Shown: piece after piece, positions 11,102-59,354 of the stretch | Layout of the letters: each line of letters starts with the position of its first letter | Numbering within the stretch: the first letter of the stretch is position 1 | Sequence record: MK250019.1 | DNA length: 63,688 nucleotides | Reading direction: 5' to 3' (one strand) | Translations under genes and position numbers: made by a program | Notes under the pieces: generated by a model | The model's database searches: none | The model's input: the letters and a program-made list of their open reading frames with translations, nothing else | What the model was told of the DNA's origin: nothing

Positions 11102-11172
11102 ATATAGTTTAAAGGATTCGAACCTTTTTCTCTGCTCTCACAGTGTGTTGCCACATACACCATTAAACTATA
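11102..11172 (-). ncRNA. tRNA-like RNA with GAGA tetraloop in place of an anticodon loop
   Basis: Acceptor TATAGTTT/AAACTATA (8 bp), D arm GTGT/ACAC, CTGT-GAGA-GCAG, T arm AAAGG-TTCGAAT-CCTTT. Confidence 0.6.
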
Positions 11173-11221
11173 CATTATAAATGTCATTGATATAGTTATA
11201 TAAACATTAATTCTTAATGTT

Positions 11222-11322
11222 ATTAAAGTCAGATTCGAACTGACACCTCAGCAAGGAGATAATACCACTATTGGGTAACAGAGCATCCCAAGGCACTGAC
11301 CAACAAATTATGCCTATTTAAC
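11222..11322 (-). ncRNA. Atypical tRNA-like RNA (11-nt anticodon-position loop)
   Basis: T arm GTCAG-TTCGAAT-CTGAC, D stem AGGCAT/GTGCCT, stem TTGGG/CCCAA, short AT-rich acceptor. Confidence 0.5.
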
Positions 11323-11382
11323 AACAAACTAATGTATTAATTAATAATTATATATTTTATATGTATATTACTACATAAAGTT

Positions 11383-15671: not shown

Positions 15672-16355
15672 TTACTCTAATATTTTACATTCCTCTTCTG
15701 TATATCTCTTATGTAATTCAGTTAACCACCATTTTGTTTTAACTTTTACTTTAGGCATTCGTTGTCCCTTTAATAATGTTGATCGCCTAATTACTACACC
15801 TTCTTTTATATATGGATATTTACAATTAGTTTCAGTCCAATCATTATTTTGTATATCTTTAATAAAGTCATTAACTAATGGTCCTGTATAAACTAATTGT
15901 GGTAATTCAATACCACAATCTTTAAATAAATCCATATAAATTTTTGGTTCAATATATCCTTTCTTTTTTATAAATACATCAATTAATGCAAGATGCATAT
16001 TATCTTTATCTTCTAATGAATGAAATCCTGCGAAACTATGTTCTCCATACCATTCAAAGAAAAATGTAATTTCATCAACGTCAGAGAATACATCTTTCTT
16101 ACCTCTATGTTGTTCAACAATATTAGATAATATAGTTTCATAATTATGTGATTTAAAATAACGTACAGCATCACCAAATTGTTCAGATGACTCATCTACC
16201 ATACATTTTCTTGAACCAAAATTTGTGAACATCTTTTTCTTAACAGAATATTTTGCACAGAAATTTTGTCCATCTAATTTATTAAATGCCCATACTTGTT
16301 CACCTAGTAATTCAGTATTATATTTTATATTATCTATTGAATCGTAATGTTTCAT
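15672..16355 (-). CDS. ATP-dependent RNA ligase (Rnl-type adenylyltransferase domain)
   Basis: Motif I NKLDGQN, III FFEWYG, IV EGVVIR, V KVKVK. Confidence 0.75.
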   Translation of the reverse strand: MKHYDSIDNIKYNTELLGEQVWAFNKLDGQNFCAKYSVKKKMFTNFGSRKCMVDESSEQFGDAVRYFKSHNYETILSNIVEQHRGKKDVFSDVDEITFFFEWYGEHSFAGFHSLEDKDNMHLALIDVFIKKKGYIEPKIYMDLFKDCGIELPQLVYTGPLVNDFIKDIQNNDWTETNCKYPYIKEGVVIRRSTLLKGQRMPKVKVKTKWWLTELHKRYTEEECKILE

Positions 16356-22129: not shown

Positions 22130-22993
22130 TTATATACTTATATCTTTTATTTCTCTATCTAATGATATACATTTAGGATCTATATTTTCATATGTAAAAA
22201 CACTATTCTATCCTTTTGGATCATCAAAGAATCTATACATAGTTGCTTTATTTCCTTCAATATAAGAACCTCTTGTTTTTAAATCTATCTTTAATATTAC
22301 TGCATTATTTATATTTTGTTTATTCTTAAATAAATCTTTTGCATAACTTTCCAATTTATTATAATTATATTTTAAATAAAAATAAACTCTATCTGGATAA
22401 TTATCACCATTAAATTGCTTAGATCTCGGTATTAACCCATTTTTCTATATTTTCTAATATGTTTTATAATCAGTTATATGGTATAAAATACCATCACATT
22501 CCTTATATACATAATCAGTTAATTCATATATAAATTTTGGATGTAACATAAATACATAGTTATCATTCTATCGTTTTTTTACCGCAATAAAATATCCTAA
22601 ATTATAAATAATAGATTCTAGATTTATTAATGCATCTTTATTATATTCATCATCATAATCATCACAATATATATAAAAATATAATAATGGTGTTTTATCT
22701 TTCTATAATGGATTATAATCAATTCCAGCATGATGAATAAAACCATCAAAATATTTTTTTAGTTTAGATAATGCTTTATTCGGATCCATTGTATGTAATA
22801 AACCTTCATACAAATAATTTTGTTCACATTTTTTTAAGTAACTATATTGACATGTATCTTCTATACCATATTTTAGTTGATTATATGACTAAAACCATAT
22901 ATTATCTTTTGAATATTCTCTTAATGCATTATCATAATAATTAAATTTCATTTCATATAAGGTTTTGCCTATCAATCTATCATAACTATCCAT
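22130..22993 (-). CDS. ADP-ribosyltransferase-fold / Tpt1(KptA)-like protein (287 aa, 6 TAG)
   Basis: C-terminal LYHITD....KI(Q)KNGLIP...RVYFYL...VILKID...FFDDP....VFTYENIDP..I. Absent from the ORF track. Confidence 0.6.
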
Positions 22994-23132
22994 AAAATTA
23001 AATATTTATAAAAATTTAATTATTTATTACATTTATCGAATATATTGCAAACCTTACTAATAGTTTTCAAAAAATTATTAATAAAAAATAGGTTATGAAA
23101 TACGAGATTTCATAACCTATTAATACTTCATG

Positions 23133-23218
23133 CGGAAGCTGTAGGATTCGAACCTACGGGCCGTCTCCGGTCTCGGGTTTTCAAGACCCGCGCAATCGAC
23201 CAACTCTGCCAAACTTCC
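23133..23218 (-). tRNA. tRNA-Ser(TGA)
   Basis: Type II cloverleaf, CGGGT-CTTGAAA-ACCCG, G73. Confidence 0.93.
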
Positions 23219-23359
23219 AAATAAAAATTAGGATTTATATTCTGTGAGAATCCTTTAACTCAGTACCAATACGATGGTCTCCAAGACTTTCCATTAAATA
23301 AATTTAATGTTCTTGTAGTTACGATTCTATATCATAATAATATAGACTATTAATAATTG

Positions 23360-23430
23360 TTGCAACTAACGGAATCGAACCGCTTACTCTCTCGCATGAT
23401 GAGAATGTGTTGCCATTACACCAAGATGCA
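23360..23430 (-). tRNA. Atypical tRNA with CAT anticodon
   Basis: Cloverleaf with loop ATCATGC and a T-T mismatch in the acceptor. Confidence 0.6.
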
Positions 23431-23552
23431 TGCAGAGTTTTATCGATCGCTTATTATCTCTGTCATTCATATTTCCCCATTTATGATATTACTTTATAGA
23501 TACACAATCGCGAACAGTTATCTATATTCATAAAATAAACGTATCATACTAG

Positions 23553-23627
23553 TTGCGGAAGGGTGGGACTCGAACCCACGATCTTTTGCTTATGAGACAA
23601 ACGAGATACCAACTTCTCTACCCCGCG
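23553..23627 (-). tRNA. tRNA-Met(CAT), initiator-like acceptor
   Basis: CGCGGGG with C1xA72; 2-nt bulge in the acceptor; lacks the three G-C pairs in the anticodon stem. Confidence 0.75.
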
Positions 23628-23971
23628 ATATATAAAAACATAAAAATAATAATGAATTCATAGATGGATTCCTGACTACCATCAAACCTCATTACATATT
23701 AAGCACATTATTCAGTCACTACAAGTTAGTTCATGACGCTAACTTTTTATGTAGGAAGGATTGATTACCTTCAAAGGCTACAGACATCATTCCATTAAAA
23801 CGATTTGACCTTTCTTACGTCACTCACAGTTGGCCAACTGTGGTTATTTTAACCTTATGCTTCTTAATATTGATTACTCTAAATCATATCTTTTCAAATA
23901 TAACCTAAATGCCTTATTTGCTGTCCACAAATTATTCAGCAATATAAAAACATTATTAAGTTATGTTATTG

Positions 23972-24157
23972 AGCTCCGAGTCGGATTCGAACCAACGACC
24001 TGCTCATTGCTCTATGCTGAAGAAACGAACTTCAGATATTATAAATTTAATTCTCATTAAATTTTTGCATTAACCACTATGCTACATAGAGTTTAATTTT
24101 TTTCAATCTTTATTGATTGTAAACAAGTGAGCTGCACTACCACTGTGCTATCGGAGC
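23972..24157 (-). tRNA. tRNA-Thr(TGT) interrupted by a 114-nt intron (24009-24122)
   Basis: GCTCCGA/TCGGAGC acceptor; GCTCA-CT-TGT [intron] AA-TGAGC. The intron holds a tRNA mimic at 24009-24091. Confidence 0.85.
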
Positions 24158-24237
24158 ATAAATTTTATTAACTTATTATTTATCTAATTTACTTTAAAAA
24201 TTAATAATAAATCAAAAAAATATTTCATAATTATTTG

Positions 24238-24318
24238 TACCTTCACTCGGACTCGAACCGAGACGTAATTAAACCTAGCTCCTTAGGCTAGTGACTATAC
24301 CAATTCGTCTATGAAGGT
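24238..24318 (-). tRNA. tRNA-Leu(AAG)
   Basis: CTAGC-CTAAGGA-GCTAG, variable arm, A73. Confidence 0.85.
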
Positions 24319-24393
24319 ATTAAAATTAGTTTCATAAAGAAACTTTTTATTTAATAACGTAAATTTAAAATAATTTATTTTTAACTATTTTAG

Positions 24394-24467
24394 TAGTGCG
24401 TACCGGGATCGAACCGGTGAAATACCAGCGTGAAAAACTGGCGACTTAACCACTTGTCAAACGCACC
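24394..24467 (-). tRNA. tRNA-Glu(TTC)
   Basis: CCAGT-TTTTCAC-GCTGG. Confidence 0.9.
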
Positions 24468-24489
24468 AAATTTTTTTAAAATACATTAT

Positions 24490-24518
24490 ATTATATATAA
24501 CTTTTTAAATAAAGTCTA
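24490..24518 (-). promoter_or_regulatory. sigma70-like promoter TAGACT-N17-TATAAT
   Basis: Inside the tRNA array, upstream of tRNA-Glu. Confidence 0.6.
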
Positions 24519-24550
24519 TATATTTATTAAAAATATTTTCAAAATATTTG

Positions 24551-24654
24551 TGGGAACAACAGGATTCGAACACTGTGACGTAAGATCATTTCAACCGGTT
24601 TGTAAATACAACCCACTTACCATGGGTCTCTCACACCAACGAGAAGGTATTCCC
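24551..24654 (-). ncRNA. Degenerate tRNA-like RNA (GTA loop, long extra arm)
   Basis: GGGAATA/TGTTCCC acceptor, ACCCA-TGGTAAG-TGGGT, bulged T arm. Confidence 0.5.
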
Positions 24655-24659
24655 AAATA

Positions 24660-25310
24660 TTATAATTTATTTATATATTCCTTTAATTCTTTCGCTTTAT
24701 ATGGTAATTCATATTTTTTACACCATTTCTTTATAGCATTACCAGAAATACCATATAATCTTCCAATATTTTCAAATGTAATATATTTCCTAAATAATTC
24801 TATTAACTCTTCTTTTGAAGGAATAATATAATTTTTATTGGTTTTTATATTATCAGATATTTTATTATACTAACTAATTATAGAATTGTCTTTAAATTTA
24901 TATATTAAATTATTAACAGCATTATCATCTTTTATAATTTCTGTTGGACATTCTAGTAAATTACTATGTATTTCTCGATGGCAATTAGAACATACTAATA
25001 CACATTTATCTAATTCTGTTTTTACTTTATTCCAACTTCTAGTATAACCTCTACTTCCTATTGCAAAATCTTTCTATTCAGGATTAATATGATGAAATTC
25101 TAATGCTGAAATACATTTATTATAACCACAACATTGACATCTATTCCCTTTATATGCTAATGCTAATAGTTTTATATGATCTCTTCGTTTCTAAACATAT
25201 TCAGACTAACATTTCATGCATTTCCAATGAATTGAATTATCATAAAAATACTATTTAAATAAAGTATTCCCATGCTTTTTGCATATACGATATTCTTTTA
25301 TATCACTCAT
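24660..25310 (-). CDS. HNH homing endonuclease with C-terminal HTH (216 aa, 5 TAG)
   Basis: CQCCGY...LEFHHINPE(Q)KDF...KCVLVCSNCHREIH; starts 4 nt after tRNA-Asn. Confidence 0.85.
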
Positions 25311-25314
25311 ATTG

Positions 25315-25388
25315 CGCTTCGGAATGGACTCGAACCATTGACTTTCTGATTAACAGTCAGACGTTCTAACCAACTGAACTACCGAAGC
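25315..25388 (-). tRNA. tRNA-Asn(GTT)
   Basis: Canonical cloverleaf. Confidence 0.95.
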
Positions 25389-26056
25389 AAATATTGAATA
25401 GTTTATCTTCGGACACTATTCATAAATTATTAAAATTCAGTCATATACTTACCGAGAATTATATATGCACTATATCATGAAAGTTTATTCATAATGGCAC
25501 TACTTATCATGATTAAAACCATATTCAACTTTGGTAACTAATATTCATATAGGAAAAATATCTTACCATCTCATCTTAAATATATGGTTGAATAACATAT
25601 ATTCATAATTATTTTTTAGAACCTATATTAAAATCAAAAAAATGCATATCATTATTATAAGAAATAATTAAAACTTATAATAAAGTCTCGAGCTATGCGC
25701 AATATCTTTATAAAAAATGTAAATATAAAACAGATAATATTGAATAACAAATTCTTTTTATAACTGTTTCATTATTTAAATCTACATCTTTTGTCCTATC
25801 TCTCTATATATGTAAATCATAAAGAAGATTATGTGAACGCCATTCATTTATTAAACTATACATACTTCTTTTATGAATTATATAACTATTATCACATCTC
25901 TATTTAATACTATTAATAACATATTTCATGTTCTTAATAGATTTTATTTGGTAACTATCAATAATACATATATTATCTTTACTAATAATTACTTCTGGAT
26001 TAATCATAAATATATTTTTAACTATTTCATATATTTATTCATAATCAACATTATTG

Positions 26057-26129
26057 TGACTCTGGTAAGATTCAAACTTACGACTCACTCCTTAGAAGGG
26101 AGTTGCTCTATTCACTGAGCTACAGAGCC
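26057..26129 (-). tRNA. tRNA-Arg(TCT)
   Basis: ACTCC-CTTCTAA-GGAGT. Confidence 0.92.
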
Positions 26130-26160
26130 AAATAACAACATAGATATGTTAAATAAGTTG

Positions 26161-26234
26161 CGGTACGTACGAGATTCGAACTCGTGACTTCTACAGTGAC
26201 AGTGTAGCGCTCTGACCAACTGAACTAACGCACC
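26161..26234 (-). tRNA. tRNA-Asp(GTC)
   Basis: CTACA-CTGTCAC-TGTAG, G73. Confidence 0.95.
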
Positions 26235-26464
26235 AAATTAAAAAACAGAAGTCATTTATATATTAAGTATTTGAGTTATTAAATATATTCCAAAAATATA
26301 TTAATCACTTTGTAAACATTATTATAAAAATAAGTTTGCTGTATTGACTTCCATATTCATAAACAAATCTCATTAAACACTTACATTTCTTACTAATAAA
26401 AGTCTCATCGTAAGTCAAATACTTCAATTATTATTTATGAATTATTATATTATTTAAATTTGTG

Positions 26465-26539
26465 TGGGCCCAGTAGGACTTGAACCTACGACCTTCAGAT
26501 TATGAGTCTGCTGCTGCTAACCGTCTGAGCTATAGGCCC
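26465..26539 (-). tRNA. tRNA with CAT anticodon, Ile2-like (or elongator Met)
   Basis: GGGCCTA/TGGGCCC acceptor resembles bacterial Ile2. Confidence 0.85.
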
Positions 26540-26606
26540 AAATAATATATTTTTATATTATGTAATTAAAATATCTATATTATTAATATTAAAATTTAAT
26601 TTATAG

Positions 26607-26679
26607 TGTTCCGTACGAGACTCGAACTCGTTACCCCGATATTAAAAGTATCGTGCTCTGCCAGATGAGCTAACGGAAC
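26607..26679 (-). tRNA. tRNA-Lys(TTT)
   Basis: CGATA-CTTTTAA-TATCG. Confidence 0.92.
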
Positions 26680-26689
26680 CGCATATTAA

Positions 26690-27508
26690 TTACATAACCT
26701 AATATAATTTATCTAATCGTTCATTATATCTCCAAAATTGACAATGTAATTTATTTATAATATTATTCTAACGAATTATATCTTTATCTGATAAAATATT
26801 ATTATATACATCTTTATAATGTTTAGGTTCATCATATTCAAATACAATATTTTTTTCTTTATCATATCCATCAAGAAAATAACCTAAAATCTCACATTCA
26901 CCGCCATTTCCGTAATACTATAAATTCCAGTTATTTTCTTTATTTAATTTTTCTATATATTCTCCAGAATTTTTATTAAATCGTGGATTGTGAAATCCTT
27001 TATTCTTTTTCAAATATTCAATTGCACCTAATCGCTATTTATATTTATGATCTTCTGTATGATGTGTACCTAAATTATAGGGTATATTTTTACCAGACAT
27101 ATAATTCTATCTAATTGTAATTGATTGCTATTTTACGCTATCACTTGTTTTTATAGTTAAACCTTTATTCCATGCAATATGTCCTTTTGTTGCTCCATTA
27201 TTGCCATGATGTATTTCTCTATTAGGATTCATATGACAATATCTTTCATGATATTTTATACCATAAATTGAATATAAATTATTACAAAACTAACAATTAA
27301 CTTTCTAACAATTAATTTTCTTTATCTTAAAATCTTTCTATTTAAACTATAAATCAATATTATATTTTTCAACTATTATTTTTAAATAATTTATATTTCC
27401 TGAATTCTAATAACAATTTAACTATCGCAAACAATCATTATATGATGTACAATTATTTAATTTCTAAATAATTTCATTATCACTAATCTATTTAATATTA
27501 TTTTTCAT
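26690..27508 (-). CDS. Vsr/EDxHD-like PD-(D/E)XK homing endonuclease (272 aa, >10 TAG)
   Basis: AWNKGL and HHTEDHK NUMOD-like segments; GYFLDGYDKEKNIVFEYDEPKHY. Absent from the ORF track. Confidence 0.75.
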
Positions 27509-27533
27509 GTTTTCAAAGAACTAAATACATAAT

Positions 27534-27562
27534 ATTATATGTAAAACTTAAAATAAAGTCTA
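27534..27562 (-). promoter_or_regulatory. sigma70-like promoter TAGACT-N17-TATAAT
   Basis: Upstream of the 27508 endonuclease. Confidence 0.6.
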
Positions 27563-27593
27563 TTTTTAATAGATTATTTTTTAAATTATTTTG

Positions 27594-27667
27594 TTGGGTG
27601 GGTGAGACTTGAACTCACGACCTCTTGCTTATCAGGCAAGCTATCTAACCAGCTGATATACCACCCA
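27594..27667 (-). tRNA. tRNA-Ile(GAT)
   Basis: CTTGC-CTGATAA-GCAAG. Confidence 0.92.
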
Positions 27668-27673
27668 AAATTA

Positions 27674-27934
27674 AAACAAGTAGATTTACGAGACACAGCT
27701 TCTTCACCCTTTATAAAGGAAACTCGCTATTAGGCACTTGCGCTGTTTTACGAAGTTGTTGTGTGTCAACTTATGGCTTCTCACGAAATTTGCTGCTCTT
27801 CACATCTATGATCGAAATCAAACCAATTCTTTTCAATAATTGACCTGTAACCCTTATCAGTTCTTCAGTATATAACATAAGCTAGCATTACTATACACTT
27901 ACTCATTATTATAATCAGAAGTCTATACTTGTTT
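27674..27934 (-). ncRNA. Candidate structured ncRNA closed by a terminal stem
   Basis: AAACAAGTA...TACTTGTTT ends; GC-enriched and non-coding; lies between two tRNAs. Confidence 0.4.
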
Positions 27935-27939
27935 TTTAG

Positions 27940-28022
27940 TAGAGATAAAGGGACTCGAACCCTTACACTTTAACAGTATATGCTCCTAAGGCATACGTGG
28001 CTACCAATTACACCATATCTCT
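27940..28022 (-). tRNA. tRNA-Leu(TAG)
   Basis: TATGC-CTTAGGA-GCATA, variable arm. Confidence 0.92.
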
Positions 28023-28028
28023 AAAATG

Positions 28029-28182
28029 TGGACCCTCGTGGAATCGAACCACGACCTCTGGATTGTCTCTATAAATGGAATCGAACCATTAATAATAACC
28101 ATTAATATTATAGAGATTGATTTAATACAGTTTACTCTGTTAATTCAGTCCAGCGTACAGGCACCAGCCATACGCAAGGTCC
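28029..28182 (-). tRNA. tRNA-Phe(GAA) interrupted by a 79-nt intron (28065-28143)
   Basis: GGACCTT/AGGGTCC; CTGGA-CT-GAA [intron] AA-TCCAG. The intron holds a minimal tRNA mimic at 28065-28116. Confidence 0.85.
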
Positions 28183-28191
28183 ATTTATGTG

Positions 28192-28271
28192 TTGCGGGTC
28201 TTAGAGTCGCACTAAGTATCGCATAGCTTATGAGACTAGCATGATTTATATATCTGTTTCACCCCCCCGCA
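28192..28271 (-). tRNA. Atypical tRNA with CAT anticodon
   Basis: GCGGG/CCCGC acceptor, loop CTCATAA, T loop TGCGACT, enlarged D loop. Confidence 0.55.
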
Positions 28272-28443
28272 ATATTATATTATTATTTTTTAAATAGGCC
28301 ATTTTCACTGGTTATATTTAAACTATTCCATTGTCCTCAGCTATCTAACGTTCTTTTTCTTTCTAACCCAAATGATTAATTTTAAGGTAATTACGCTATT
28401 TAATAGCGTCACTGAGAGTTGTTTAGAACCTATACTTTATTTG

Positions 28444-28510
28444 TCAGATTTAGAGATTCGAACTCCTTAGACTTATTCCCGCGCGTCCTATTCGTCAATC
28501 TACCCATCTG
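28444..28510 (-). ncRNA. tRNA-like remnant
   Basis: CAGAT/ATCTG ends and a TTCGAAT loop; other arms are weak. Confidence 0.3.
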
Positions 28511-28549
28511 TAGAAATACAGTTCCCACACTGTAAGTCACCTGTAATTG

Positions 28550-28620
28550 TTGGACTAGTAGGACTCGAACCTACTCAAATAGCGTCAAAGGCTATTGTGC
28601 TGCCATTACACCATAGTCCA
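28550..28620 (-). tRNA. tRNA-Gln(TTG)
   Basis: ATAGC-CTTTGAC-GCTAT. Confidence 0.93.
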
Positions 28621-28637
28621 GTATTTATATCACATAG

Positions 28638-28874
28638 CGGTTGTAATTGGATTCGAACCAATAATCTACCCACGACCTTGGGTCATTCTACGAGTAAACG
28701 ATAATTTTTTTATTCATTATAAGCAAATAATTATAAAATCAATAACGGTATAAGAGCTTAAGATTAATACCATTCGATCCGCAAACATCTCATATTAATT
28801 ATTATAATATTCGAAATAAATATTCATTTTAATTACCAGTTTTAACTACTCCACCTGTTTTGAACTATACAACC
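28638..28874 (-). ncRNA. tRNA-framed RNA with about 170 nt inserted in the D loop
   Basis: GGTTGTA/TACAACC-G acceptor, GTTC...GAAT D stem, ACCCA-AGGTCG-TGGGT, ATTGG-TTCGAAT-CCAAT. Confidence 0.55.
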
Positions 28875-28897
28875 ATATTATTAAAAATAGACGTTCC

Positions 28898-28975
28898 TAT
28901 CTGATTTGCACAGCACCCTATACCATAATGATATAGATTCTAACTATTAAACTATCAGAACATTAAATATACTTA
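28898..28975 (-). pseudogene. Degenerate tRNA-like sequence
   Basis: GTTCT/GGAAC ends, CTATA/TATAG stem, TGCAAAT loop. Confidence 0.3.
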
Positions 28976-29014
28976 ATAACTAGTATATAAAAATATATCC
29001 TCTATTTTTATTTC

Positions 29015-29425
29015 TTAATTTGATGGATGATAATAATCTTTCCAATTATTAAATGTATTCTTTATTGATAAATTTTGTAAATATTCAACAGAATAACATT
29101 TATTAGTATGTATTATTCTATGATGATTTGGACATACAATAATTAAATTTGAAACATCATCAGTTCCACCATTACATTTCTCAATTATATGATGAATATC
29201 ACATGTTGATTCATTCCAACCACATATTGCACAACCTATTTTAGAACGATTTAAAATCTTTGATATTGTTCTTTTTGAACAATCTAATATAGAATTTATT
29301 TCTTGTTCTTTTGAATGTTTTCTATGTTGTTTACATTCATCACATCTTATATATCTATCTTTACGGATTGTCTTATTAGTTAAAAAAGATTTTCCACATA
29401 TTTCACATATATACTAATATTCCAT
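29015..29425 (-). CDS. HNH endonuclease (136 aa, TAG at codon 4)
   Basis: CAICGW...CDIHHIIEKCNGGTDDVSNLIIVCPNHHRIIH; directly after tRNA-Tyr. Confidence 0.85.
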
Positions 29426-29432
29426 AATAATG

Positions 29433-29515
29433 TGGGTGAGGCAGGACTCGAACCTGCGAAGTCAAATGACAGCTGATTTACAGTCAGCCCCCTTTGCCGC
29501 TCGGGACACTCACCC
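29433..29515 (-). tRNA. tRNA-Tyr(GTA), canonical type II
   Basis: GCTGA-CTGTAAA-TCAGC, long variable arm, A73. Confidence 0.95.
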
Positions 29516-29850
29516 AAAATTAATGAAATATTTCGAAGAAATTGCATCTTCTAATAATCTTACAGCTTACCCTTTAGGTTTTTTAATAGCTTGCCTGTTA
29601 CTTCACAGGAACAAAATATTTCATTAAAAATTACCCGAAACATTCATTGTCGTCACAGTCACATCTATAGGATTTAAAAATAGATTCTAACCAGGAAGAG
29701 TTTGCTCTACATCATCAGATTTATTTTATATTTAGACTTAATAATAAACCCTACATACTTACCATATAACTCTTTTATTTAATAGTCATATAAATACACT
29801 GTCTAATAATATAAGTATACAACTATTACTGTAATGTTTCGCACAAGACG

Positions 29851-29924
29851 TGGAGGTATGGAGACTCGAACCCCAGACACCCTGCGTGCAAAGCAGGTGC
29901 TCTAGCCAACTGAGCTATACCCCC
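29851..29924 (-). tRNA. tRNA-Ala(TGC)
   Basis: G3:U70; CCTGC-TTTGCAC-GCAGG. Confidence 0.95.
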
Positions 29925-29996
29925 AATATTTCTCTGTTTTAAGAGTAATATTTATATTTGAAAAACATTATATTGCCTATTCAAATAATAAAAAAT

Positions 29997-30227
29997 TGTT
30001 CACATAGGCGGATTCGAACACACCTTCTTAGATTTCATTGTGCCATTCCAATTTCATTCTTCACCTACTCTGGACATCAAGACCTTTTCTTTTGGCTTCT
30101 ATCGGACACATTATTTTTATAATCAAATAATGGAGGTCCTGCACTTTTATTCGCATTTCAACTTCACTACTCTCTTCTTTTACCTCCATCAGCATTCAGT
30201 TTTACCATAGCTAAACTATATGTGAAC
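29997..30227 (-). ncRNA. tRNA-framed 231-nt RNA with a large insert replacing the anticodon arm
   Basis: GTTCACATA/TATGTGAAC acceptor, D arm AGTTT/AAACT, TTCGAAT T loop, internal helix ATGGAGGT/ACCTCCAT. Confidence 0.65.
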
Positions 30228-30233
30228 ACATGG

Positions 30234-30293
30234 TAGGTTATGAGGAACTCGAATCCCCGTACTAATAAGTTATTAGTATCCAAAATATAACCT
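30234..30293 (-). ncRNA. Minimal tRNA-like RNA
   Basis: AGGTTAT/ATAACCT, one internal hairpin, GGGGA-TTCGAGT-TCCTC. Confidence 0.45.
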
Positions 30294-31228
30294 TATAAAG
30301 TATTAATATCAACTTCTTTATGTTCTAATATTAATTTAATATTATAACCTAATTTTTTATATTCATAAAATTTATCTTTAATTTCTTGCAGATTTAATGT
30401 ATAGTTTGATTTTATTTCTATAATAGTATTTGTTGATGGTAAATAAAAATCAGGAATTGCAATTCTATATATTTTCTTTATTGAATCAAAATATTTTATA
30501 TGTAAATTTTCAACTTCATATAAAATTTTCTATTCATCTAATTTTTTTGCATAATCCTGTTCATATGAACTTCTCAAATATACATTTTTATTATCCCATG
30601 TTTTATACCAACCTGCTTTATATATTGATTTATTGAAAATATTACTATGATCTAATCTACCTGTTAATACAGCATTTTGTGTAAACATCTCTGGTTCAGA
30701 ACGTGTAGGAATATTTAAATATTTAAATATTTTCTATGTTAAATTATGCCCATTTTTATAACCATACATTTCTGCAATCTATAAACCTGACATTTTTTTA
30801 TTCCAATATAAATCGTATAATTTCTATCTAATTATATTAAATTCATTTTCAACATCAATAGTTCCTAATTTATTTTTATCAAACCCAAAATATTTTATTA
30901 ATGTATTAAACTACTTATAGTTATGTATTTGACAAAAAGGATTCTAACATTGTTTTTGATATTTGTAATACGTTCGTCCACAAATTTTACATTTACACTA
31001 ATTTTGGGGTAATGTCTATTTACATGACATACATAAACATTCTTTTTTTGATAATCTTTTATTAACATAAATAAGTTTTCCACATATATTACATATCGTT
31101 TCCTTTTGCTAATTATTATCATCATTTTTAGTTGAAAATGATCTTGCGCATTTTGAACAACAAAAACGACCACTTCCATATGTTCCATCATGTTCTTTTC
31201 CACAATTTTCACAAATCATAGTATACAT
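30293..31228 (-). CDS. Zn-finger plus TnsA-like PD-(D/E)XK homing endonuclease (311 aa, multiple TAG)
   Basis: CENCGKEHDGTYGSGRFCCSKC; LRSSYEQDYAKKLDE...PDFYLPSTNTIIEIKS. Confidence 0.8.
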
Positions 31229-31637
31229 AATTCTTTATTATATTTATCTACACTTATAATAGAAATAGTTCAAATTTTATAAAAAATAGTATACTGCTTT
31301 CCCAAGTGGTATACTATGAAATAATTCACAAATCCGATTTTATGAATTTAAAAATTAAATAGTTAATTAGGGTGGATTTGCACTTCCCTTACTCCATAGC
31401 TAAATGTTAATGATGGACCCTTCTTACTAATGAATAAAAGAAAATTGCGCAAGTTTTTATTCATTAATATGTTTAGTTCTACATAACGTAGTTCTCTACT
31501 TACCGTTAAACTTCGTTACTATTTAATTAAAAACGTTTAAAAATATATTCAGAAATTTAATATATATTCGCCTCGACGATACTATCTGAACATAGAAGGT
31601 ACATCCTTTATACATACTAAATCATATTTTTAAATTG

Positions 31638-31801
31638 CGGGAATAGAGGGAATCGAACCCACGCCCAGAGATTAGCTACATAAATTGGATTCGAACCAAT
31701 TAAACTTTATAAAGTATGATACCCAACAGCATTATGTAGTTTAATTTAATCAGGTTGTTTCCTGTATACAGTCTCTTGCTCGACCTTCGAGCTATATTCC
31801 C
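31638..31801 (-). tRNA. tRNA-Tyr(GTA)-like, short variable loop, interrupted by a 93-nt intron (31674-31766)
   Basis: GGGAATA/TATTCCC-G; AGAGA-CT-GTA [intron] AA-TCTCT. The intron holds a tRNA mimic at 31675-31739. Confidence 0.8.
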
Positions 31802-31805
31802 AACT

Positions 31806-31995
31806 TTTGCATTAAGGTCAGCAAACCACACATCTCGCCGTCATATAAGCATCCACGATTACTATCGTTCCATGTATACAACCAATCATGCCTGTGCGAC
31901 TATTTGTTCTATTCGGCTCGTGGCGATATTCTTTTCGAAAGCAATAGCAAATATTAAAAGGACTTTAATATTCTATAATATCGCCTGATGCACTT
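31806..31995 (-). ncRNA. Candidate structured ncRNA
   Basis: GC-enriched; TGCAT terminal stem and GGCGATATT/AATATCGCC helix. Confidence 0.4.
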
Positions 31996-33118: not shown

Positions 33119-33363
33119 AATATATTAATCGTTATTTATATTACACTATTCAACGTATTAACTATTCACAATATCTCGTAACATACATGCACAACGTACT
33201 TGTTCATACCAATTAAATGAATCGGCATAAATATCCACGTTATTTTTATATATGTTATTAAATTGTCTCATAGTTTTTTATCTTTTAAAATTATTTCCTT
33301 TATTATATATATCTAAATTTTTTTCAAAAGTCTTCATTTTTGAGAACTTTTTTTCAAAAAATA

Positions 33364-34087: not shown

Positions 34088-34651
34088 TTAATCCATATTT
34101 AACTTATCTACAATAATACCACACTCTTCAAGAAGTTTGATACCAGCATCACTTTTATAGTTATTTAAATAAACAACACGTGATACTTCTGACTGTACCA
34201 AAAGTTTTGCACAATGAATACATGGAGATAATGTTACATATACAGTACCTCCTTTTGCAGATGAATTATATTTTGCAAGTTTTGTAATTGCATTACTTTC
34301 TGCATGCAATGTAATATCTTTTGTAATAAGTCTAAAACCAGGCATCATACCTTTATTGATATTACGATACTGTACAAGAATCTCTTCCTGTTTTTTCTTA
34401 TCATGATAAGATTCAGCAGTTTCAAGTGTTGTATGTTCACCTGTATTAATATTATAGATTTCTTCACAAATATTCGGCATACCAATAGGCATACCATTAA
34501 AGCCCTGTGAAATAACCTGATCATCCTTTGAAACAACAATACAACCTACCTGTTTCTTAATAGCATATGACAAATTACTCATAGCAATAGCCATATTCAT
34601 ATATGCAACATCAAATTCATGCTGTCTTTCTTTAGATGATTTCTGTACCAT
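34088..34651 (-). CDS. dCMP deaminase
   Basis: VGC.VV, GFNGMP, HAESNAI, TLSPCIHCAKLLVQS. Confidence 0.92.
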   Translation of the reverse strand: MVQKSSKERQHEFDVAYMNMAIAMSNLSYAIKKQVGCIVVSKDDQVISQGFNGMPIGMPNICEEIYNINTGEHTTLETAESYHDKKKQEEILVQYRNINKGMMPGFRLITKDITLHAESNAITKLAKYNSSAKGGTVYVTLSPCIHCAKLLVQSEVSRVVYLNNYKSDAGIKLLEECGIIVDKLNMD

Positions 34652-52581: not shown

Positions 52582-52936
52582 NNNNNNNNNNNNNNNNNNN
52601 NNNNNNNNNNNNNNNNNNNNNNNNNNNNNNNNNNNNNNNNNNNNNNNNNNNNNNNNNNNNNNNNNNNNNNNNNNNNNNNNNNNNNNNNNNNNNNNNNNNN
52701 NNNNNNNNNNNNNNNNNNNNNNNNNNNNNNNNNNNNNNNNNNNNNNNNNNNNNNNNNNNNNNNNNNNNNNNNNNNNNNNNNNNNNNNNNNNNNNNNNNNN
52801 NNNNNNNNNNNNNNNNNNNNNNNNNNNNNNNNNNNNNNNNNNNNNNNNNNNNNNNNNNNNNNNNNNNNNNNNNNNNNNNNNNNNNNNATTGTTTATAAAA
52901 AATCTAAAATATATATAAAAAATATATTTTTTATTT

Positions 52937-54148
52937 ATGTCAAATCAAGAACTAATAGAATATTTAACTGATAATAGTGGAGAATATAATAAACGTATAA
53001 ACAGAAAATACTTAGAAATTCATGATTTAAACATATTACATATATTATATAATGTATATGATGATCTGTCTAAAGAAACTCCCGTATATGAAATATATTA
53101 CCGGTTAAAAAATAATTTAAAAAAACGACCAGTATGTATTATTTGTGGAAAACCAGTAAAATATACTTCTGGCCATTATGCAAAATTTTGTAGTAAAGAA
53201 TGTCAATATTCAGATTTAGGTAAAAAAATAACAAAAGAAATAAAAATAAAATCAAATTTAGAAAAGTATGGAGTTGAACATACGTCTCAATTAAAGGGTG
53301 TAACAGATAAACGTACAAAAAGTCGAGCAGATCACGTTAATAAAATACAATAGCATGTTCGTGAATCATTATATAAAAAATATGGAGCATATGATGTTAT
53401 GCATATTCCTCATATTTTATAGAAAATAAAAGATNNNNNNNNNNNNNNNNNNNNNNNNNNNTTTCCTTTACAATAGTTAAAAAAAGAAAATAGTGAAATT
53501 TATTAGAAAATTTCGCAAACATGTATTAATAAATTTGGTGTAGACTCTCCATTAAAGAATAAAGAAGTTAGAGAAAAAATTAAACAAACCAATATACAGA
53601 AATATGGAGTTGATTATCTTTTTAAAAGTAATATTATAAAAGAAAAAATTAAGCAAACAAATATATAGAAATACGGAGTTGATAATCCATTAAAAAATAA
53701 AGAGATATGGAAAAAATCACAAGATAATAGACAAATATCTTCAAAATCAAAATTAGAAAATAATTTTTTAAATTATTTAAAATTAAAATATGAATCAGAT
53801 GATATTATTACATAGTATAAATCTAAAGAATATCCATATTATTGTGATTTTTATATAAAGTCCATTAACTTATATATAGAAATTCAAGGTCATTGGACTC
53901 ATAACGATCATCCGTTTGATATTAATAATTTAAATGACTAGTTAATAATGAATAAATGGCGTACCAAATCATTATCTGACAAATATTATAAAAATGCTTT
54001 AAATACATGGACGATAAAAGACGTAGAAAAGCGAAATACTGCTATATAGAATAATCTAAATTATTTAGAAATATTTGGAAAAACAGATTTAAATAAGTAT
54101 ATAGATATATTTGAAAACTATATTAAAAATATGGAGAATAATACATAA
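52937..54148 (+). CDS. Free-standing homing endonuclease, KYG-repeat plus PD-(D/E)XK (403 aa)
   Basis: CIICGK, KYGV repeats, YPYYCDFYIKSINLYIEIQGHWTH. Confidence 0.8.
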
Positions 54149-54165
54149 TTATTCTCCATATTTTA

Positions 54166-54771
54166 TTAAAATTCAATAATACTATTAAATATATTATGAA
54201 GATATTCCTTATATTCTGTTTTACCATTATTTACATTAATAAGTTCCTTATTTGTTAATAAAGACATACAAAAAGCCTATTGAAATAAAATACATTCTTT
54301 GTTAATAAGTTCTTTATTTGAATTTGATAATGATAAATTATCTTCATGTTCTAACAAAAATTCCGGATCACCAACTAATACATATAGAAATATGTTTTCT
54401 TTGCCGAATATTTTAGAAGTCTTATAATCCAATACAATATTGTCCTCTGTTATTTCTTGATATGTTCTATTTCTATATAATGGACCATAAACATATTCAG
54501 AAATCCAGCCTCTATCTAATATGATGTAATCATACATATCAGAATTATATAATGTATTAAGTTGTTTTACTAATATATCTGTATAATACATATGCGAATA
54601 ATGTGGAATATCTTCTTTCTTTATTTCCTTCGGTGGTTTTTCAAGATGAATAATATTCACATTCATATTCAACTAATCCTACAAAACCGATGTGATCCGG
54701 TTAATTAATGTAGTTTTACCGGTATTATCCATACCGTCTATTATAATAAGTTTTGTATCTTTCTATCTCAT
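54166..54771 (-). CDS. tmk: Thymidylate kinase-like dNMP kinase (201 aa, 4 TAG)
   Basis: IIIDGMDNTGKTT and ILDRGWISEYVYG; TAG at codon 3. Confidence 0.8.
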
Positions 54772-54775
54772 ATTT

Positions 54776-55657
54776 TTATGAAAAATAATAATTTATACGT
54801 ATATTGTCCGATGATATATAACCATAAATTTCATCTACTAATCGATGAATAATAACAATTNNNNNNNNNNNNNNNNNNNNNNNNNNAAACGGTTCATCAA
54901 ATAATGAATCTATGTTTTCTTCATAATCATAACTTTCTGTATCATAATCTGTGTCATCCGACATTTCATTTACTTCCGGTTCTGGTTCTGGTTCCATTTC
55001 AGATTCAACTTCTGGTTCTGTATCTTCACCATTTAATTTACTATATATTTTATCTATTTTTTTATCTATAGTCTTAAGTTGATCATTAAGAATTGTTGTC
55101 TTAATCTTATTCTTGAAATCCTCAATCTCCCTATTATGAATAGAGTAGAGCTCTGATAATAAAACATATGTTCTATTATAGATATAATTGTCATCTAAAC
55201 ATAATTCTTTCCTTGTTTCTTCAGAACAATCTTCTGGAATACCTCGATTAATGATATTATACTTATCTTCATACCATCGTGATAGATAAACATCTCTGAT
55301 TGAACCTCCATTATCACAATATTCAGAGATCTTTTTCACTTCTTCTTGTTTTCCATTATTATTTGAAATTATTTCAAATTTATCTGTATGTGAATGAGGA
55401 TTATTTAATACCCAATATTTTACCAAATGCCATTTATAATCGCATGTTTTCATTTTCTCCCAATATTCTGGAATACCATCAATTTCATGTGCAATATGAA
55501 ATTTTCTATATGGATATTCATTATCTGAATTAACTCTATAAACATCATATGGTAATAATGTTTTCTTATCTATCTTATTTAAACTTTCTTCATTCCATAC
55601 ATATCCTTTTACACATGGTAATTTTACCTCTATAACTCTTGTTACGTATGTACTCAT
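54776..55657 (-). CDS. Hypothetical protein
   Basis: 293-aa ORF with a short N run. Confidence 0.65.
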   Translation of the reverse strand: MSTYVTRVIEVKLPCVKGYVWNEESLNKIDKKTLLPYDVYRVNSDNEYPYRKFHIAHEIDGIPEYWEKMKTCDYKWHLVKYWVLNNPHSHTDKFEIISNNNGKQEEVKKISEYCDNGGSIRDVYLSRWYEDKYNIINRGIPEDCSEETRKELCLDDNYIYNRTYVLLSELYSIHNREIEDFKNKIKTTILNDQLKTIDKKIDKIYSKLNGEDTEPEVESEMEPEPEPEVNEMSDDTDYDTESYDYEENIDSLFDEPFXXXXXXXXXIVIIHRLVDEIYGYISSDNIRINYYFS

Positions 55658-55763
55658 TTTATTTAAATCTATTTTTTCTATAGTTTATATTAAAAGAAAT
55701 AGGTATTGTTTGAAAACAATATTTTTAATAATAAATATATTAGTAAAAAATATAAAATTTATT

Positions 55764-56144: not shown

Positions 56145-56229
56145 TTAATAATTAAATAAGGAGATTAATAAAATTAGTCTCCTTATTTTCATTTTAAATA
56201 AATATTTAAAACATATATTTCTCTTAATC

Positions 56230-56994: not shown

Positions 56995-57098
56995 NNNNNN
57001 NNNNNNNNNNNNNNNNNNNNNNNNNNNNNNNNNNNNNNNNNNNNNNNNNNNNNNNNNNNNNNNNNNNNNNNNNNNNNNNNNNNNNNNNNNNNNNNNNN

Positions 57099-57479: not shown

Positions 57480-57501
57480 AATAAAATTAATTAAAAAATT
57501 A

Positions 57502-57992: not shown

Positions 57993-58024
57993 AACCATAA
58001 TAATTATTATATATTGTTAATATA

Positions 58025-59321: not shown

Positions 59322-59354
59322 ATTATATTAATTAAATATATTCATATTTTGTAA

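What the first reader, a model, noticed from the sequence alone, without database searches (positions are those of the whole stretch)
24009..24122. Thr intron: near-complete tRNA mimic with its anticodon arm capped by a GNRA tetraloop
Seen: CTCTATGT-A-GCAT AGTGGTTA ATGC (canonical D arm)-AAATTTAAT GAGA ATTAAATTT (9-bp stem, GAGA loop)-TGAAG TTCGTTT CTTCA-GCATAGAG-C. The elbow is kept and decoding is removed. The same GAGA cap occurs in the free mimic at 11102-11172. Inference: selection preserves tRNA shape for processing or decoy function.
Basis: partly seen in the sequence, partly recalled or inferred. Interest (0 to 1): 0.75.

Follow-up and report, generated by a model that had tools for sequence, protein, structure and literature searches.

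The report
tRNA-shaped intron in megaphage tRNA-Thr
A 114-base insert splits the anticodon loop of the threonine tRNA gene of the gut megaphage Lak-A2 and folds into a tRNA look-alike with no anticodon; this oddity was published in 2019, but how the insert is removed is still unknown, and the comparisons here suggest that it borrows the cell's tRNA-trimming enzymes.

Summary
The window is Prevotella phage Lak-A2. Window 24009-24122 (minus strand) is an exact 114-nt insertion between nucleotides 36 and 37 of tRNA-Thr(UGU). Lak-C1 and Lak-B1 carry the same gene uninterrupted. Its last 83 nt fold into a cloverleaf whose "anticodon" arm is a 9-bp stem capped by GAGA.

It is already published: Devoto et al. 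2019 (Nat Microbiol, Fig. 4) described "enigmatic" Lak tRNA introns and this intron-encoded possible tRNA.

New here:
- The four Lak-A2 introns (Thr, Phe, Gly, Asn) are one family: W-U-A, a 4-6 bp hairpin with a hexaloop, an A-rich linker, a 13-bp acceptor/T-arm helix with a UUCG T-loop and a GG loop, then a terminal C.
- The full cloverleaf and the GNRA cap are peculiar to the Thr copy.
- The 3' splice site copies the N73-C-A-A context of all 28 ordinary Lak tRNA genes.
- The published "Tyr(GTA)" host gene is really Asn(GUU).
- Lak-A2 encodes Pnkp, four RNA-ligase-family genes and a CCA enzyme. It has no RtcB, splicing endonuclease or reverse transcriptase.

Best reading: a mobile intron whose tRNA-shaped handle recruits tRNA end-processing nucleases, with phage enzymes resealing the loop. 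Splicing itself was not shown.

The parts
24123..24157 (-). 5' exon of tRNA-Thr(UGU), 35 nt, ending with the anticodon (..CUUGU)
   Evidence: Rfam's tRNA model scores 49.7 bits across 23972-24157 with a 117-nt insertion. The exon is identical to the intronless Lak-C1 gene.
24009..24122 (-). The 114-nt intron, between nucleotides 36 and 37. No target-site duplication and no ORF.
   Evidence: Limits fixed by the intronless alleles L001 and L002. Covariance model R1 scores it 74.7 bits.
24120..24122 (-). Conserved W-U-A at the intron's 5' end (UUA here)
   Evidence: All four introns begin (U/A)-U-A, three nucleotides before the core hairpin.
24104..24119 (-). 5' hairpin: 5 bp (CAAUC/GAUUG) with hexaloop AAUAAA
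   Evidence: Minimum-free-energy fold. The same hairpin occurs in Phe, Asn and Gly with different stem sequences and loops AGUAAA, AAACAA and AAUAAA.
24092..24103 (-). A-rich linker (AAAAAAAUUAAA)
   Evidence: Every member has an 8-12 nt linker ending ..UUAAA..AUCAA or ..AUUAA.
24009..24091 (-). tRNA-like domain: 8-bp acceptor, D arm with GG, 9-bp stem capped by GAGA, 8-nt variable stretch, T arm, terminal C
24052..24055 (-). GAGA (GNRA) tetraloop in place of an anticodon loop
   Evidence: It reads GAAA in the related contig L061.
24009..24009 (-). Unpaired terminal C, the last intron nucleotide; the exon continues with AA
   Evidence: All four introns end helix-C followed by AA or UAA. All 28 ordinary Lak-A2 tRNA genes read N73-C-(A/U)-A.
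23972..24008 (-). 3' exon of tRNA-Thr(UGU), 37 nt (A37 to discriminator U73); C74 lies at 23971
28065..28143 (-). Sister intron (79 nt) in tRNA-Phe(GAA); gene at 28029-28182
   Evidence: An intronless allele exists in Lak-B2.
31675..31767 (-). Sister intron (93 nt) in a tRNA-Asn(GUU) gene at 31638-31801, between nucleotides 35 and 36. Published as Tyr(GTA).
11102..11172 (-). Free-standing tRNA-like element with GCAA- and GAGA-capped hairpins. It is not a member of the intron family.
15672..16355 (-). RNA-ligase-family gene (227 aa), one of four in Lak-A2; a candidate sealing enzyme
   Evidence: PF09414 at 35.1 bits; phrog_548 'RNA ligase', E 1.2e-13
24660..25310 (-). Free-standing HNH endonuclease gene (216 aa when TAG is read as Q), about 500 nt from the Thr gene. 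It could drive DNA-level mobility.
   Evidence: phrog_2255, E 1.3e-33; weak Pfam HNH match

Best explanation
The 114-nt element is one of a small family of ORF-less, mobile introns found only in Lak megaphages so far. There are 1-4 copies per genome, each in a tRNA anticodon loop. The intron defines its own ends. The 5' end lies three nucleotides (W-U-A) before a conserved hairpin. The 3' end lies one unpaired C after a 13-bp acceptor/T-arm helix that, with a UUCG T-loop and a GG loop, copies the 'top half' and elbow of a tRNA.

Proposed mechanism (inferred, not shown):
1. The tRNA-shaped module is a processing handle. It is seen by the same host enzymes that mature the phage's ordinary tRNAs: an RNase Z-type 3' endonuclease, and RNase P at 24091|24092.
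2. The 3' cut falls at the 3' splice site, because the helix-C-AA context is the N73-C74-A-A context of every Lak tRNA gene.
3. An unidentified nuclease cuts at the hairpin-defined 5' site.
4. The phage's own healing and sealing enzymes (T4-type Pnkp and one of four RNA-ligase-family proteins) rejoin the anticodon loop.

In the Thr copy the handle has grown into a full cloverleaf whose anticodon arm is closed by a GNRA tetraloop, so it cannot decode.
For: Shown:
- Exact presence/absence alleles without target duplication for Thr, Gly and Phe.
- One family architecture, with covariation in all three helices. A covariance model finds exactly the four introns in 541 kb at 68-94 bits; the next best hit is 25 bits or less.
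- All four introns end in C followed by AA or UAA. In 28 of 28 ordinary tRNA genes, N73 is followed by C and then mostly A-A.
- The intron-bearing genes are the only Thr, Phe and Gly tRNA genes of Lak-A2.
- Phe in A2 versus B1: exons 92-95% identical, with a compensatory C-G to U-A change in the exon T stem. The intron is 80% identical and the flanks 50-58%. The interrupted gene has therefore stayed under tRNA-type constraint.
- Lak-A2 encodes Pnkp (PDB 4xrp E 1.7e-21, T4 Pnk 1ltq E 1e-13), four PF09414 ligase-family genes and a CCA-adding enzyme.

Suggestive: metatranscriptome contigs close into circles that span exactly the spacers between tRNA genes. One is 27670-27936, seen in two RNA runs and absent from the DNA-like run. 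One begins 2 nt from the Thr 3' splice site, at 24006. This is as expected if tRNA-processing by-products are ligated in infected cells.
Against: - No spliced Thr, Phe or Asn junction attributable to Lak was seen in RNA data. The two intronless junction fragments found carry sequence of other organisms' tRNAs.
- The RNA data are assembled contigs, which cannot prove ends. It is not known whether the strain behind the 24006 contig carries the intron.
- RNase P plus RNase Z alone cannot produce the 5' splice site, which lies 26-31 nt upstream of the handle.
- The 13-bp stack, against 12 bp in ordinary tRNAs, makes the exact RNase Z cut uncertain by one nucleotide.
- Spacer circles start 1-2 nt beyond C74, so the real 3' endonuclease may not cut exactly at the C|A bond.
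- The Thr T loop lacks A58.
- No endonuclease candidate was identified in the phage.
Confidence: 0.45

Rival explanations
1. Selfish insertion with no splicing. The element is a mobile tRNA-like sequence that has broken the tRNA genes. The mimic is processed out like a tRNA ('punctuation'), the two tRNA halves are waste, and the host's own tRNAs do the decoding.
For: - Patchy presence and absence among near-identical genomes.
- No splicing mechanism is known and no spliced product was seen.
- One RNA contig joins the Thr 3' exon to the downstream spacer, with an end at about 24006. That is what a dead-end cleavage product would look like.
- HNH endonuclease genes lie nearby.
Against: - The exons of the interrupted Phe gene stayed 92-95% identical, with a compensatory stem change, while the flanks fell to 50-58%.
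- The Thr, Phe and Gly genes have no intact second copy in Lak-A2.
- Insertions always fall at the same place in the anticodon loop and always restore a 7-nt loop when removed.
- The intron ends are conserved.
Confidence: 0.2
2. A new class of small self-splicing or self-cleaving RNA. The hairpin, the A-rich linker and the tRNA-like fold form a catalytic core, and mobility is by reverse splicing.
For: - The splice sites are set by the intron, not by the position in the tRNA: 36|37 in Thr, Gly and Phe, but 35|36 in Asn.
- The same intron sits in two different Asn paralogs that share little beyond the anticodon stem-loop. That is the pattern expected of reverse splicing.
- Unpaired W-U-A, the hexaloop and the linker are conserved.
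Against: - At 79-141 nt it is far below group I or II size.
- It has no U at all 5' exon ends, no terminal G and no GUGYG.
- No Rfam ribozyme or intron family matches, even at E up to 10.
- No reverse transcriptase is found in Lak-A2.
- The conserved helices are exactly those that tRNA-processing proteins recognise.
Confidence: 0.1
3. The released tRNA look-alike is the point. It is a decoy or regulator, for example a sponge for host tRNA-targeting defence nucleases or for tRNA-binding enzymes, and the intron location is only a way of expressing it.
For: - The elbow features are conserved.
- The Thr copy has a stable, anticodon-less cloverleaf.
- A free-standing tRNA-like element with GNRA caps exists at 11102-11172 and is fixed in Lak-A1, A2 and C1.
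- The phage invests heavily in tRNA repair.
Against: - The body of the mimic (D and 'anticodon' arms) is not conserved across the family. Only the processing-relevant top half is.
- Lak-C1 and the B phages do without the Thr copy.
- No RNA contig of appreciable depth covered the mimic.
Confidence: 0.15
4. Archaeal/eukaryal-type splicing: a bulge-helix-bulge motif cut by a splicing endonuclease and joined by RtcB.
For: - The intron sits in the anticodon loop.
- In the Thr precursor the anticodon stem can extend by 6 bp, which puts the two splice sites 2 bp apart.
Against: - That extension is absent in Gly and Phe, by inspection of the sequences.
- No tRNA_int_endo and no RtcB gene is found in Lak-A2. 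RtcB rang in the Bacteroides control, so a host copy is possible.
- Bacteria lack the splicing endonuclease.
Confidence: 0.03

Closest known systems
Lak megaphage tRNA introns (Devoto et al. 2019, Nat Microbiol, PMC6784885, Fig. 4 and Table S6)
   Same: This is the same object. The paper reports the Thr(TGT) intron, its absence from Lak-C1, the one-nucleotide offset from the tRNAscan prediction, and that Rfam finds a tRNA at intron positions 31-113.
   Different: The paper calls the introns enigmatic and found no Rfam hit for the other three. It did not describe a common architecture, the C|AA rule, the GNRA cap or the repair enzymes as a splicing kit. It lists the Asn host gene as Tyr(GTA), and counts 2 introns in C1 and 1 in B1 where the model finds 3 and 2.
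tRNA-like processing signals: plant mitochondrial t-elements, the MALAT1 mascRNA, and mitochondrial tRNA punctuation (from my own knowledge)
   Same: These are acceptor/T-arm mimics without a decoding function, embedded in longer transcripts. RNase P and RNase Z use them to define RNA ends.
   Different: Those elements mark the ends of mRNAs or lncRNAs. None lies inside a tRNA anticodon loop, and none has to be followed by religation of its flanks.
Healing-and-sealing tRNA ligation: T4 Pnkp plus Rnl repair of anticodon-loop breaks, and fungal/plant Trl1 in tRNA splicing (from my own knowledge; Pnkp reference 10 of the paper's supplement)
   Same: Lak-A2 has a T4-type kinase-phosphatase and Rnl2-family ligases. 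These are the activities that rejoin a tRNA cut in its anticodon loop.
   Different: In T4 the break is made by a host defence nuclease, and in yeast by the Sen endonuclease. Here the cutting enzyme is unknown.
Bacterial group I introns in tRNA anticodon loops (cyanobacterial tRNA-Leu and tRNA-fMet; Azoarcus tRNA-Ile)
   Same: The same location (the anticodon loop, some at 36|37), patchy distribution and mobility.
   Different: Those are 200 nt or longer, with a conserved catalytic core, a U.G pair at the 5' splice site and a terminal G. None of these is present here (sequence).
Archaeal tRNA introns that carry another functional RNA (the C/D box RNA in the tRNA-Trp intron; from my own knowledge)
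   Same: An intron in a tRNA that itself folds into a second, separately recognised RNA.
   Different: That intron is excised through a bulge-helix-bulge motif by EndA and RtcB. No such motif or enzymes are found here.

Membership tests
Canonical decoding tRNA (Rfam RF00005) | Score at or above the curated gathering threshold | tested here: met
   30.4 bits against 29 for 24009-24091, so only marginally. Genuine Lak tRNAs score 44-75 bits.
Canonical decoding tRNA (Rfam RF00005) | A 5-bp anticodon stem with a 7-nt loop carrying U33 and an anticodon | tested here: not met
   A 9-bp stem closed by the 4-nt loop GAGA. ARAGORN's 'His(atg)' is a forced reading.
Canonical decoding tRNA (Rfam RF00005) | A T loop with U54-A58 and a 7-bp acceptor plus 5-bp T stem (12-bp stack) | tested here: not met
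   The loop UUCGUUU has U at position 58. The stack is 13 bp, read either as 8+5 or 7+6.
Lak tRNA-intron family (defined here; model R1) | W-U-A, hairpin with hexaloop, A-rich linker, 13-bp acceptor/T helix with a UUCG loop, terminal C, located in an anticodon loop | tested here: met
   74.7 bits, E 3e-10. The model was built partly from this sequence, so the score is not independent. The three sister introns supply the independent support.
Group I intron | P1 with a U.G pair at the 5' splice site, a terminal G, and a P3-P9 core of about 200 nt or more | tested here: not met
   The 5' exons end in U, C, A and U. All introns end in C. Lengths are 79-141 nt. No Rfam intron hit at E up to 10.
Group II intron | 5' GUGYG, domain V, 3' AY; usually an RT ORF | tested here: not met
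   The introns begin (U/A)UA, have no ORF and no Rfam hit. No RVT_1 is found in the genome.
Archaeal/eukaryal tRNA intron | A bulge-helix-bulge motif at the exon-intron junctions | tested here: not met
   Only Thr can extend the anticodon stem across the junctions. Gly and Phe cannot (sequences).
Archaeal/eukaryal tRNA intron | EndA-type endonuclease and RtcB ligase available | tested here: not met
   There are no PF01974 or PF01139 matches in the 541-kb phage genome. The host was not examined.
tRNA-like processing element (t-element / mascRNA kind) | An acceptor/T-arm minihelix with an elbow, and no decoding loop | tested here: met
tRNA-like processing element (t-element / mascRNA kind) | Cleavage by RNase P at its 5' end and by RNase Z at its 3' end | not testable with these tools
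   There is only an indirect hint: an RNA contig ends at 24006, 2 nt from the 3' boundary.
Small transposon / MITE (e.g. IS200/IS605-derived) | A target-site duplication, or a fixed 4-5 nt target next to one end; terminal repeats or subterminal hairpins at both ends | tested here: not met
   There is no duplication. The left flanks are UUGU, UUCC, UGAA and CUGU. Only the right flank, (U)AA, is shared.
Known self-cleaving ribozymes (hammerhead, twister, pistol, hatchet, HDV) | A match to the family covariance model | tested here: not met
   None is listed at E up to 10 over 23940-24190, or at E up to 5 over 28000-31850.

The most novel reading that the evidence does not exclude
Lak phage tRNA introns are a third kind of tRNA intron, neither self-splicing nor bulge-helix-bulge. 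Each carries its own tRNA-shaped handle, so the ordinary tRNA end-maturation nucleases cut it out. The phage's Pnkp and Rnl-family enzymes then reseal the anticodon loop. The same ligases also circularise the excised inter-tRNA spacers.
Probability: 0.3. Interest if true: 0.85.

Novelty: already known. Interest (0 to 1): 0.5.

Why it matters
Bacteria and their viruses were thought to have only self-splicing (group I) introns in tRNA genes. The Lak introns are too small for that and have stayed unexplained since 2019.

If the tRNA-shaped handle really recruits RNase P/Z-type enzymes and phage ligases, it would be a new, protein-dependent splicing route in the bacterial world. It would resemble the eukaryotic heal-and-seal pathway by convergence. 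It would also show how a phage can gate or protect its own tRNAs.

The family definition, the exact splice-site rule (W-U-A-hairpin ... helix-C | (U)AA) and the enzyme list given here make the question directly testable in vitro.

As a scan finding, however, the core observation is a rediscovery of a published feature.

Tried and rejected
- RNase III-type excision. The Thr precursor can extend its anticodon stem so that the two splice sites are staggered by 2 bp. The pairing is absent in Gly and Phe, so I treat it as chance.
- An internal guide sequence. The intron 5' ends (UACAA, UACAAG, UAACAG) are complementary to Thr or Asn anticodon loops, but not to the loops that Gly and Phe actually sit in. 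I rejected this as a general rule.
- "Only 3'-OH/5'-P chemistry is possible." I dropped this once a T4-type Pnkp was found.
- RNA evidence for splicing. The X16 loose end at 24123 and the one at 28064 are intronless junctions, but they carry T-stem or D-arm sequence of other organisms' tRNAs. They are not evidence.
- Origin of the mimic from a Lak tRNA. The best global match is the UUA suppressor tRNA, at only 52 of 83 identical positions. Inconclusive.
- Relatives outside Lak:
  - A linker-plus-T-loop pattern found only the Gly intron in IMG/VR: 2 of 45 loci, both Lak-like.
  - A Thr 5'-exon pattern found one intron-bearing locus among 26.
  - These screens depend on exact patterns, so absence elsewhere is weak evidence.
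- My permissive helix scan of the whole genome was too noisy to use.
- PDB sequence searches with two of the ligase-family proteins gave nothing useful.
- PF09511 (the Rnl1 type) rang in no control genome, so its absence from Lak-A2 says nothing.

Full report
**Identity of the window.** Window 23000-25000 is 100% identical to Prevotella phage Lak-A2 (MK250019.1, 541 kb) and 96% identical to Lak-A1 and Lak-C1. The window carries a minus-strand cluster of about 20 tRNA genes in DNA of about 25% G+C. The masked N stretches of the window lie at 52582-60496, 28 kb from the finding. I did not read, fill or report anything from them. Whole-record scans of MK250019.1 covered the record as a whole, and nothing I use comes from those coordinates.

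**The observation.** On the minus strand a tRNA-Thr(UGU) gene spans 23972-24157. It is interrupted by 114 nt at 24009-24122.
- The intron alone folds, as its minimum-free-energy structure, into a 5-bp hairpin with a hexaloop, a 12-nt A-rich linker and a four-arm cloverleaf. The z-score is -3.5, and 0 of 200 shuffles fold as well.
- Rfam's tRNA model just passes its threshold, 30.4 against 29 bits.
- The element cannot decode, because it has no 7-nt loop. ARAGORN's "His(atg)" is an artefact.
- Its T loop has U in place of A58, and the acceptor/T stack is 13 bp rather than 12.

**Exact limits.** Lak-C1 has the same gene with the loop CUUGUAA uninterrupted, and its 107 flanking bases are 100% identical. 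Lak-B1 has an intronless ortholog too. The insertion therefore lies between U36 and A37, with no ambiguity and no target duplication.

**Already known.** Devoto et al. [quoted passage not shown] They state that the Thr(TGT) intron "itself may encode a tRNA" (Fig. 4), that C1 lacks it, and that Rfam finds a tRNA at intron positions 31-113. They call the introns enigmatic. I found no later paper that addresses the mechanism.

**A single family.**
- Lak-A2 has four such introns: Thr, Phe (28065-28143), a third at 31675-31767, and Gly (record 33270-33356; L003 471-557).
- Parsed by structure, all four, together with the free-standing mimic at 11102-11172, have an 8-bp acceptor stem directly stacked on a 5-bp T stem with loop UUCG(A/U)(A/U)U. 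All 13 pairs form in each, with 2-4 pair types at 12 of 13 positions.
- All four introns begin (U/A)-U-A followed by a hairpin. The core is 4 bp, the stems covary, and the hexaloops are AAUAAA, AGUAAA and AAACAA. An A-rich linker follows. All four end with a single unpaired C.
- A GG-containing loop follows the acceptor stem in every member. It sits at the same offset in Thr, Phe and Asn.
- The part between that loop and the T arm is free to vary. Phe and Gly have nothing there, Asn-A2 has a short hairpin, Asn-B1 a long arm, and Thr the 9-bp GAGA arm. The conserved core is the tRNA top half and elbow, not the whole cloverleaf.
- A covariance model built from seven sequences finds exactly these four sites in the 541-kb genome at 68-94 bits. 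Everything else scores 25 bits or less, including the free mimic at 24 bits.
- In other genomes the model finds three sites in C1, two in B1, one in B2 and one in a 554-kb IMG/VR Lak genome.

**A correction to the literature.**
- The intron at 31675-31767 sits in a gene published as Tyr(GTA). Its intronless ortholog in Lak-B1 (L004 5321-5392; same odd D loop and T arm, same synteny) has the loop CUGUUAA.
- The B1 gene that carries the related 141-nt intron (L004 10707-10922) is the syntenic ortholog of Lak-A2's intronless tRNA-Asn(GUU) at 25314-25388. Removing A-UACAGG...GUAG-C restores that gene's exact stem-loop.
- The host is therefore Asn(GUU), and the intron lies at 35|36. With that correction every intron ends helix-C. 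The same intron occupies two different paralogs in the two phage lineages.

**The 3' splice site looks like a tRNA 3' end.** In all 28 ordinary tRNA genes of Lak-A2, the base after the discriminator is C. It is followed by A (20) or U (6), and then by A (21). Read with a 7-bp acceptor, the Thr mimic gives N73 = G, then C, then the exon's A37 and A38. The Asn case gives G-C-U-A-A, the second commonest genuine context. The intron/exon bond is thus the bond after "C74" of a Lak pre-tRNA. That is the best clue that the enzyme trimming Lak tRNA 3' ends also makes the 3' cut.

**Evidence that the interrupted genes still matter.** The intron-bearing genes are the only Thr, Phe and Gly tRNA genes of the phage. 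Between A2 and B1 the Phe exons are 92-95% identical. All five exon changes are compatible with the tRNA structure, and one is a compensatory C-G to U-A change in the exon T stem. The intron is 80% identical, with its own T stem changed from AAUGG/CCAUU to AUUAG/CUAAU. The 150-nt flanks are only 50-58% identical.

**Enzymes.**
- Found in Lak-A2: a T4-type polynucleotide kinase-phosphatase; four genes over the cut-off of the RNA_ligase family, one of them in the window at 15672-16355; and a CCA-adding enzyme. The 2019 paper also lists a T4 RNA ligase 2 homolog, a CCA enzyme and a tRNA-His guanylyltransferase-like gene.
- Not found: RtcB, tRNA splicing endonuclease, an RNase Z-like metallo-beta-lactamase, RNase E/G, reverse transcriptase, and RNase P RNA.
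- The sealing half of a splicing pathway is therefore phage-encoded. The cutting half must come from the host or from an unrecognised phage protein.

**RNA data.** Three metatranscriptomes and one DNA-like run, all as assembled contigs, were laid on 23700-29600.
- No Lak-specific spliced junction appeared.
- The introns and the tRNAs themselves are barely covered, as expected for such libraries. One low-depth contig (depth 3.6) runs unspliced through the Phe intron.
- Contigs from RNA runs close on themselves over exactly the spacers between tRNA genes. One spans 27670-27936, between tRNA-Leu and tRNA-Ile, in two runs at depths 418 and 124. Others cover the spacer after tRNA-Thr. The DNA-like run shows none of these.
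- One such contig starts at 24006, two bases inside the exon from the Thr 3' splice site.
- This fits cleavage at tRNA-like boundaries followed by ligation. Contigs cannot prove ends, however. The stretch I laid stopped at 23700, and I cannot tell whether that strain carries the intron.

**Mobility.**
- Presence and absence are patchy. Thr is present in A1, A2 and one IMG/VR contig, and absent in C1, the B phages and others. Gly is present in A2 and C1 but not A1. Phe is present in A, C, B1, B3, B5, B6 and B9, but not in B2; B4, B7 and B8 give the same short match as B2 and were not inspected. Asn sits in different paralogs.
- Two free-standing HNH endonuclease genes lie among the tRNA genes: 24660-25310 (phrog E 1e-33) and 29015-29425. 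They could drive DNA-level spread. A variant lacking 24566-24998 occurs in two runs.

**What it is not.** It is not a group I or group II intron, not a bulge-helix-bulge intron, not a known self-cleaving ribozyme, and not a transposon with a fixed target or a duplication (see the membership table).

**Mechanism: shown and inferred.**
- Shown: a conserved, structured, mobile intron family whose limits are set by its own helices; a 3' limit that copies the tRNA 3'-end context; exons under constraint; and phage heal-and-seal enzymes.
- Inferred: the tRNA-shaped handle recruits tRNA end-processing nucleases, and a phage ligase restores the loop.
- Unknown: what makes the 5' cut. All four 5' sites read N|(U/A)-U-A before a hairpin, with U invariably at +2. 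By my own knowledge of the RN|WUU preference, this resembles RNase E-type sites, but that is only a lead.
- Rivals: a gene-killing selfish insert, a new small ribozyme, or a decoy RNA as the real product. None is excluded.

**Verdict.** The feature is already in the literature, and the mechanism remains open and is now sharply testable.

Noticed in passing
window 31638-31801 (-); L004 5321-5392 and 10707-10922: The intron-bearing tRNA published as Tyr(GTA) is a tRNA-Asn(GUU), with the intron between nucleotides 35 and 36. Nearly the same intron sits in one Asn paralog in Lak-A/C and in the other paralog in Lak-B.
   Followed up: yes
whole Lak-A2 record (window tRNAs included): In all 28 ARAGORN-called tRNA genes the base after the discriminator is C (28/28), followed by A (20) or T (6) and then A (21). 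The genes encode N-C-A-A rather than N-C-C-A. This hints at a particular 3'-end maturation route.
   Followed up: partly
window 27670-27936 (-), 23700-23969 (-), and a contig ending at 24006: In metatranscriptome assemblies the spacers between tRNA genes are highly represented, and their contigs close on themselves ('goes back' joints). This occurs in two or three RNA runs but not in the DNA-like run, as if excised spacers were circularised. The ends lie 1-3 nt from the tRNA boundaries.
   Followed up: partly
window 15672-16355 (-); Lak-A2 record 166932-167561, 361427-362128, 213377-213730 and 94370-95305: There are four RNA_ligase-family (PF09414) genes over the cut-off, one of them in the window and one broken by stop codons. 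There is also a T4-type polynucleotide kinase-phosphatase most similar to Capnocytophaga Pnkp1. This is an unusually rich RNA repair kit.
   Followed up: partly
window 24660-25310 (-) and 29015-29425 (-): Free-standing HNH endonuclease genes lie between tRNA genes and are readable only with TAG = Q (5 TAG codons in the first, 1 in the second). Contigs in runs X16 and X2 lack 24566-24998, so the first gene is itself polymorphic.
   Followed up: partly
window 11221-11323 (-): A 103-nt tRNA-like gene with good acceptor, D and T arms and a long variable arm, but an 11-nt 'anticodon' loop (AUGCUCUGUUA). The free mimic follows it 48 nt downstream. ARAGORN fuses the two into a false 'tRNA-Thr(cgt) with intron'.
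   Followed up: no
Lak-A2 record 489205-489375 (+), 34242-34346 (+), 34356-34476 (+), 135107-135208 (-): Further over-long tRNA-like genes (101-171 nt) with good acceptor and T arms and large inserts that do not match the intron family model (21 bits or less). They may be other kinds of interrupted or expanded tRNAs.
   Followed up: no
Lak-C1 record 460513-460591; Lak-B1 record 126885-126969: The family model finds a Phe intron in Lak-C1 and in Lak-B1. That makes 3 and 2 introns, where Table 1 of the 2019 paper lists 2 and 1.
   Followed up: yes
L070 (IMG/VR contig 3300001525_000092, 148 kb), around position 980: From the first conserved D-arm base onward, an intronless tRNA-Thr identical to the Lak-A2 exons sits in a completely different sequence context. 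The gene may have been exchanged with another phage or with the host.
   Followed up: no
window 28644-28703 (-): A partial tRNA-like match (Rfam 24.7 bits, model positions 6-65), just upstream (5') of tRNA-Gln(ttg) on the minus strand. It may be a tRNA remnant.
   Followed up: no
window 22130-31228 (-), ORFs between the tRNA genes: Several ORFs open only when TAG is read as a sense codon, for example 14 TAG codons in 26690-27508 and 9 in 30293-31228. This agrees with the published TAG = Gln recoding of Lak phages.
   Followed up: no
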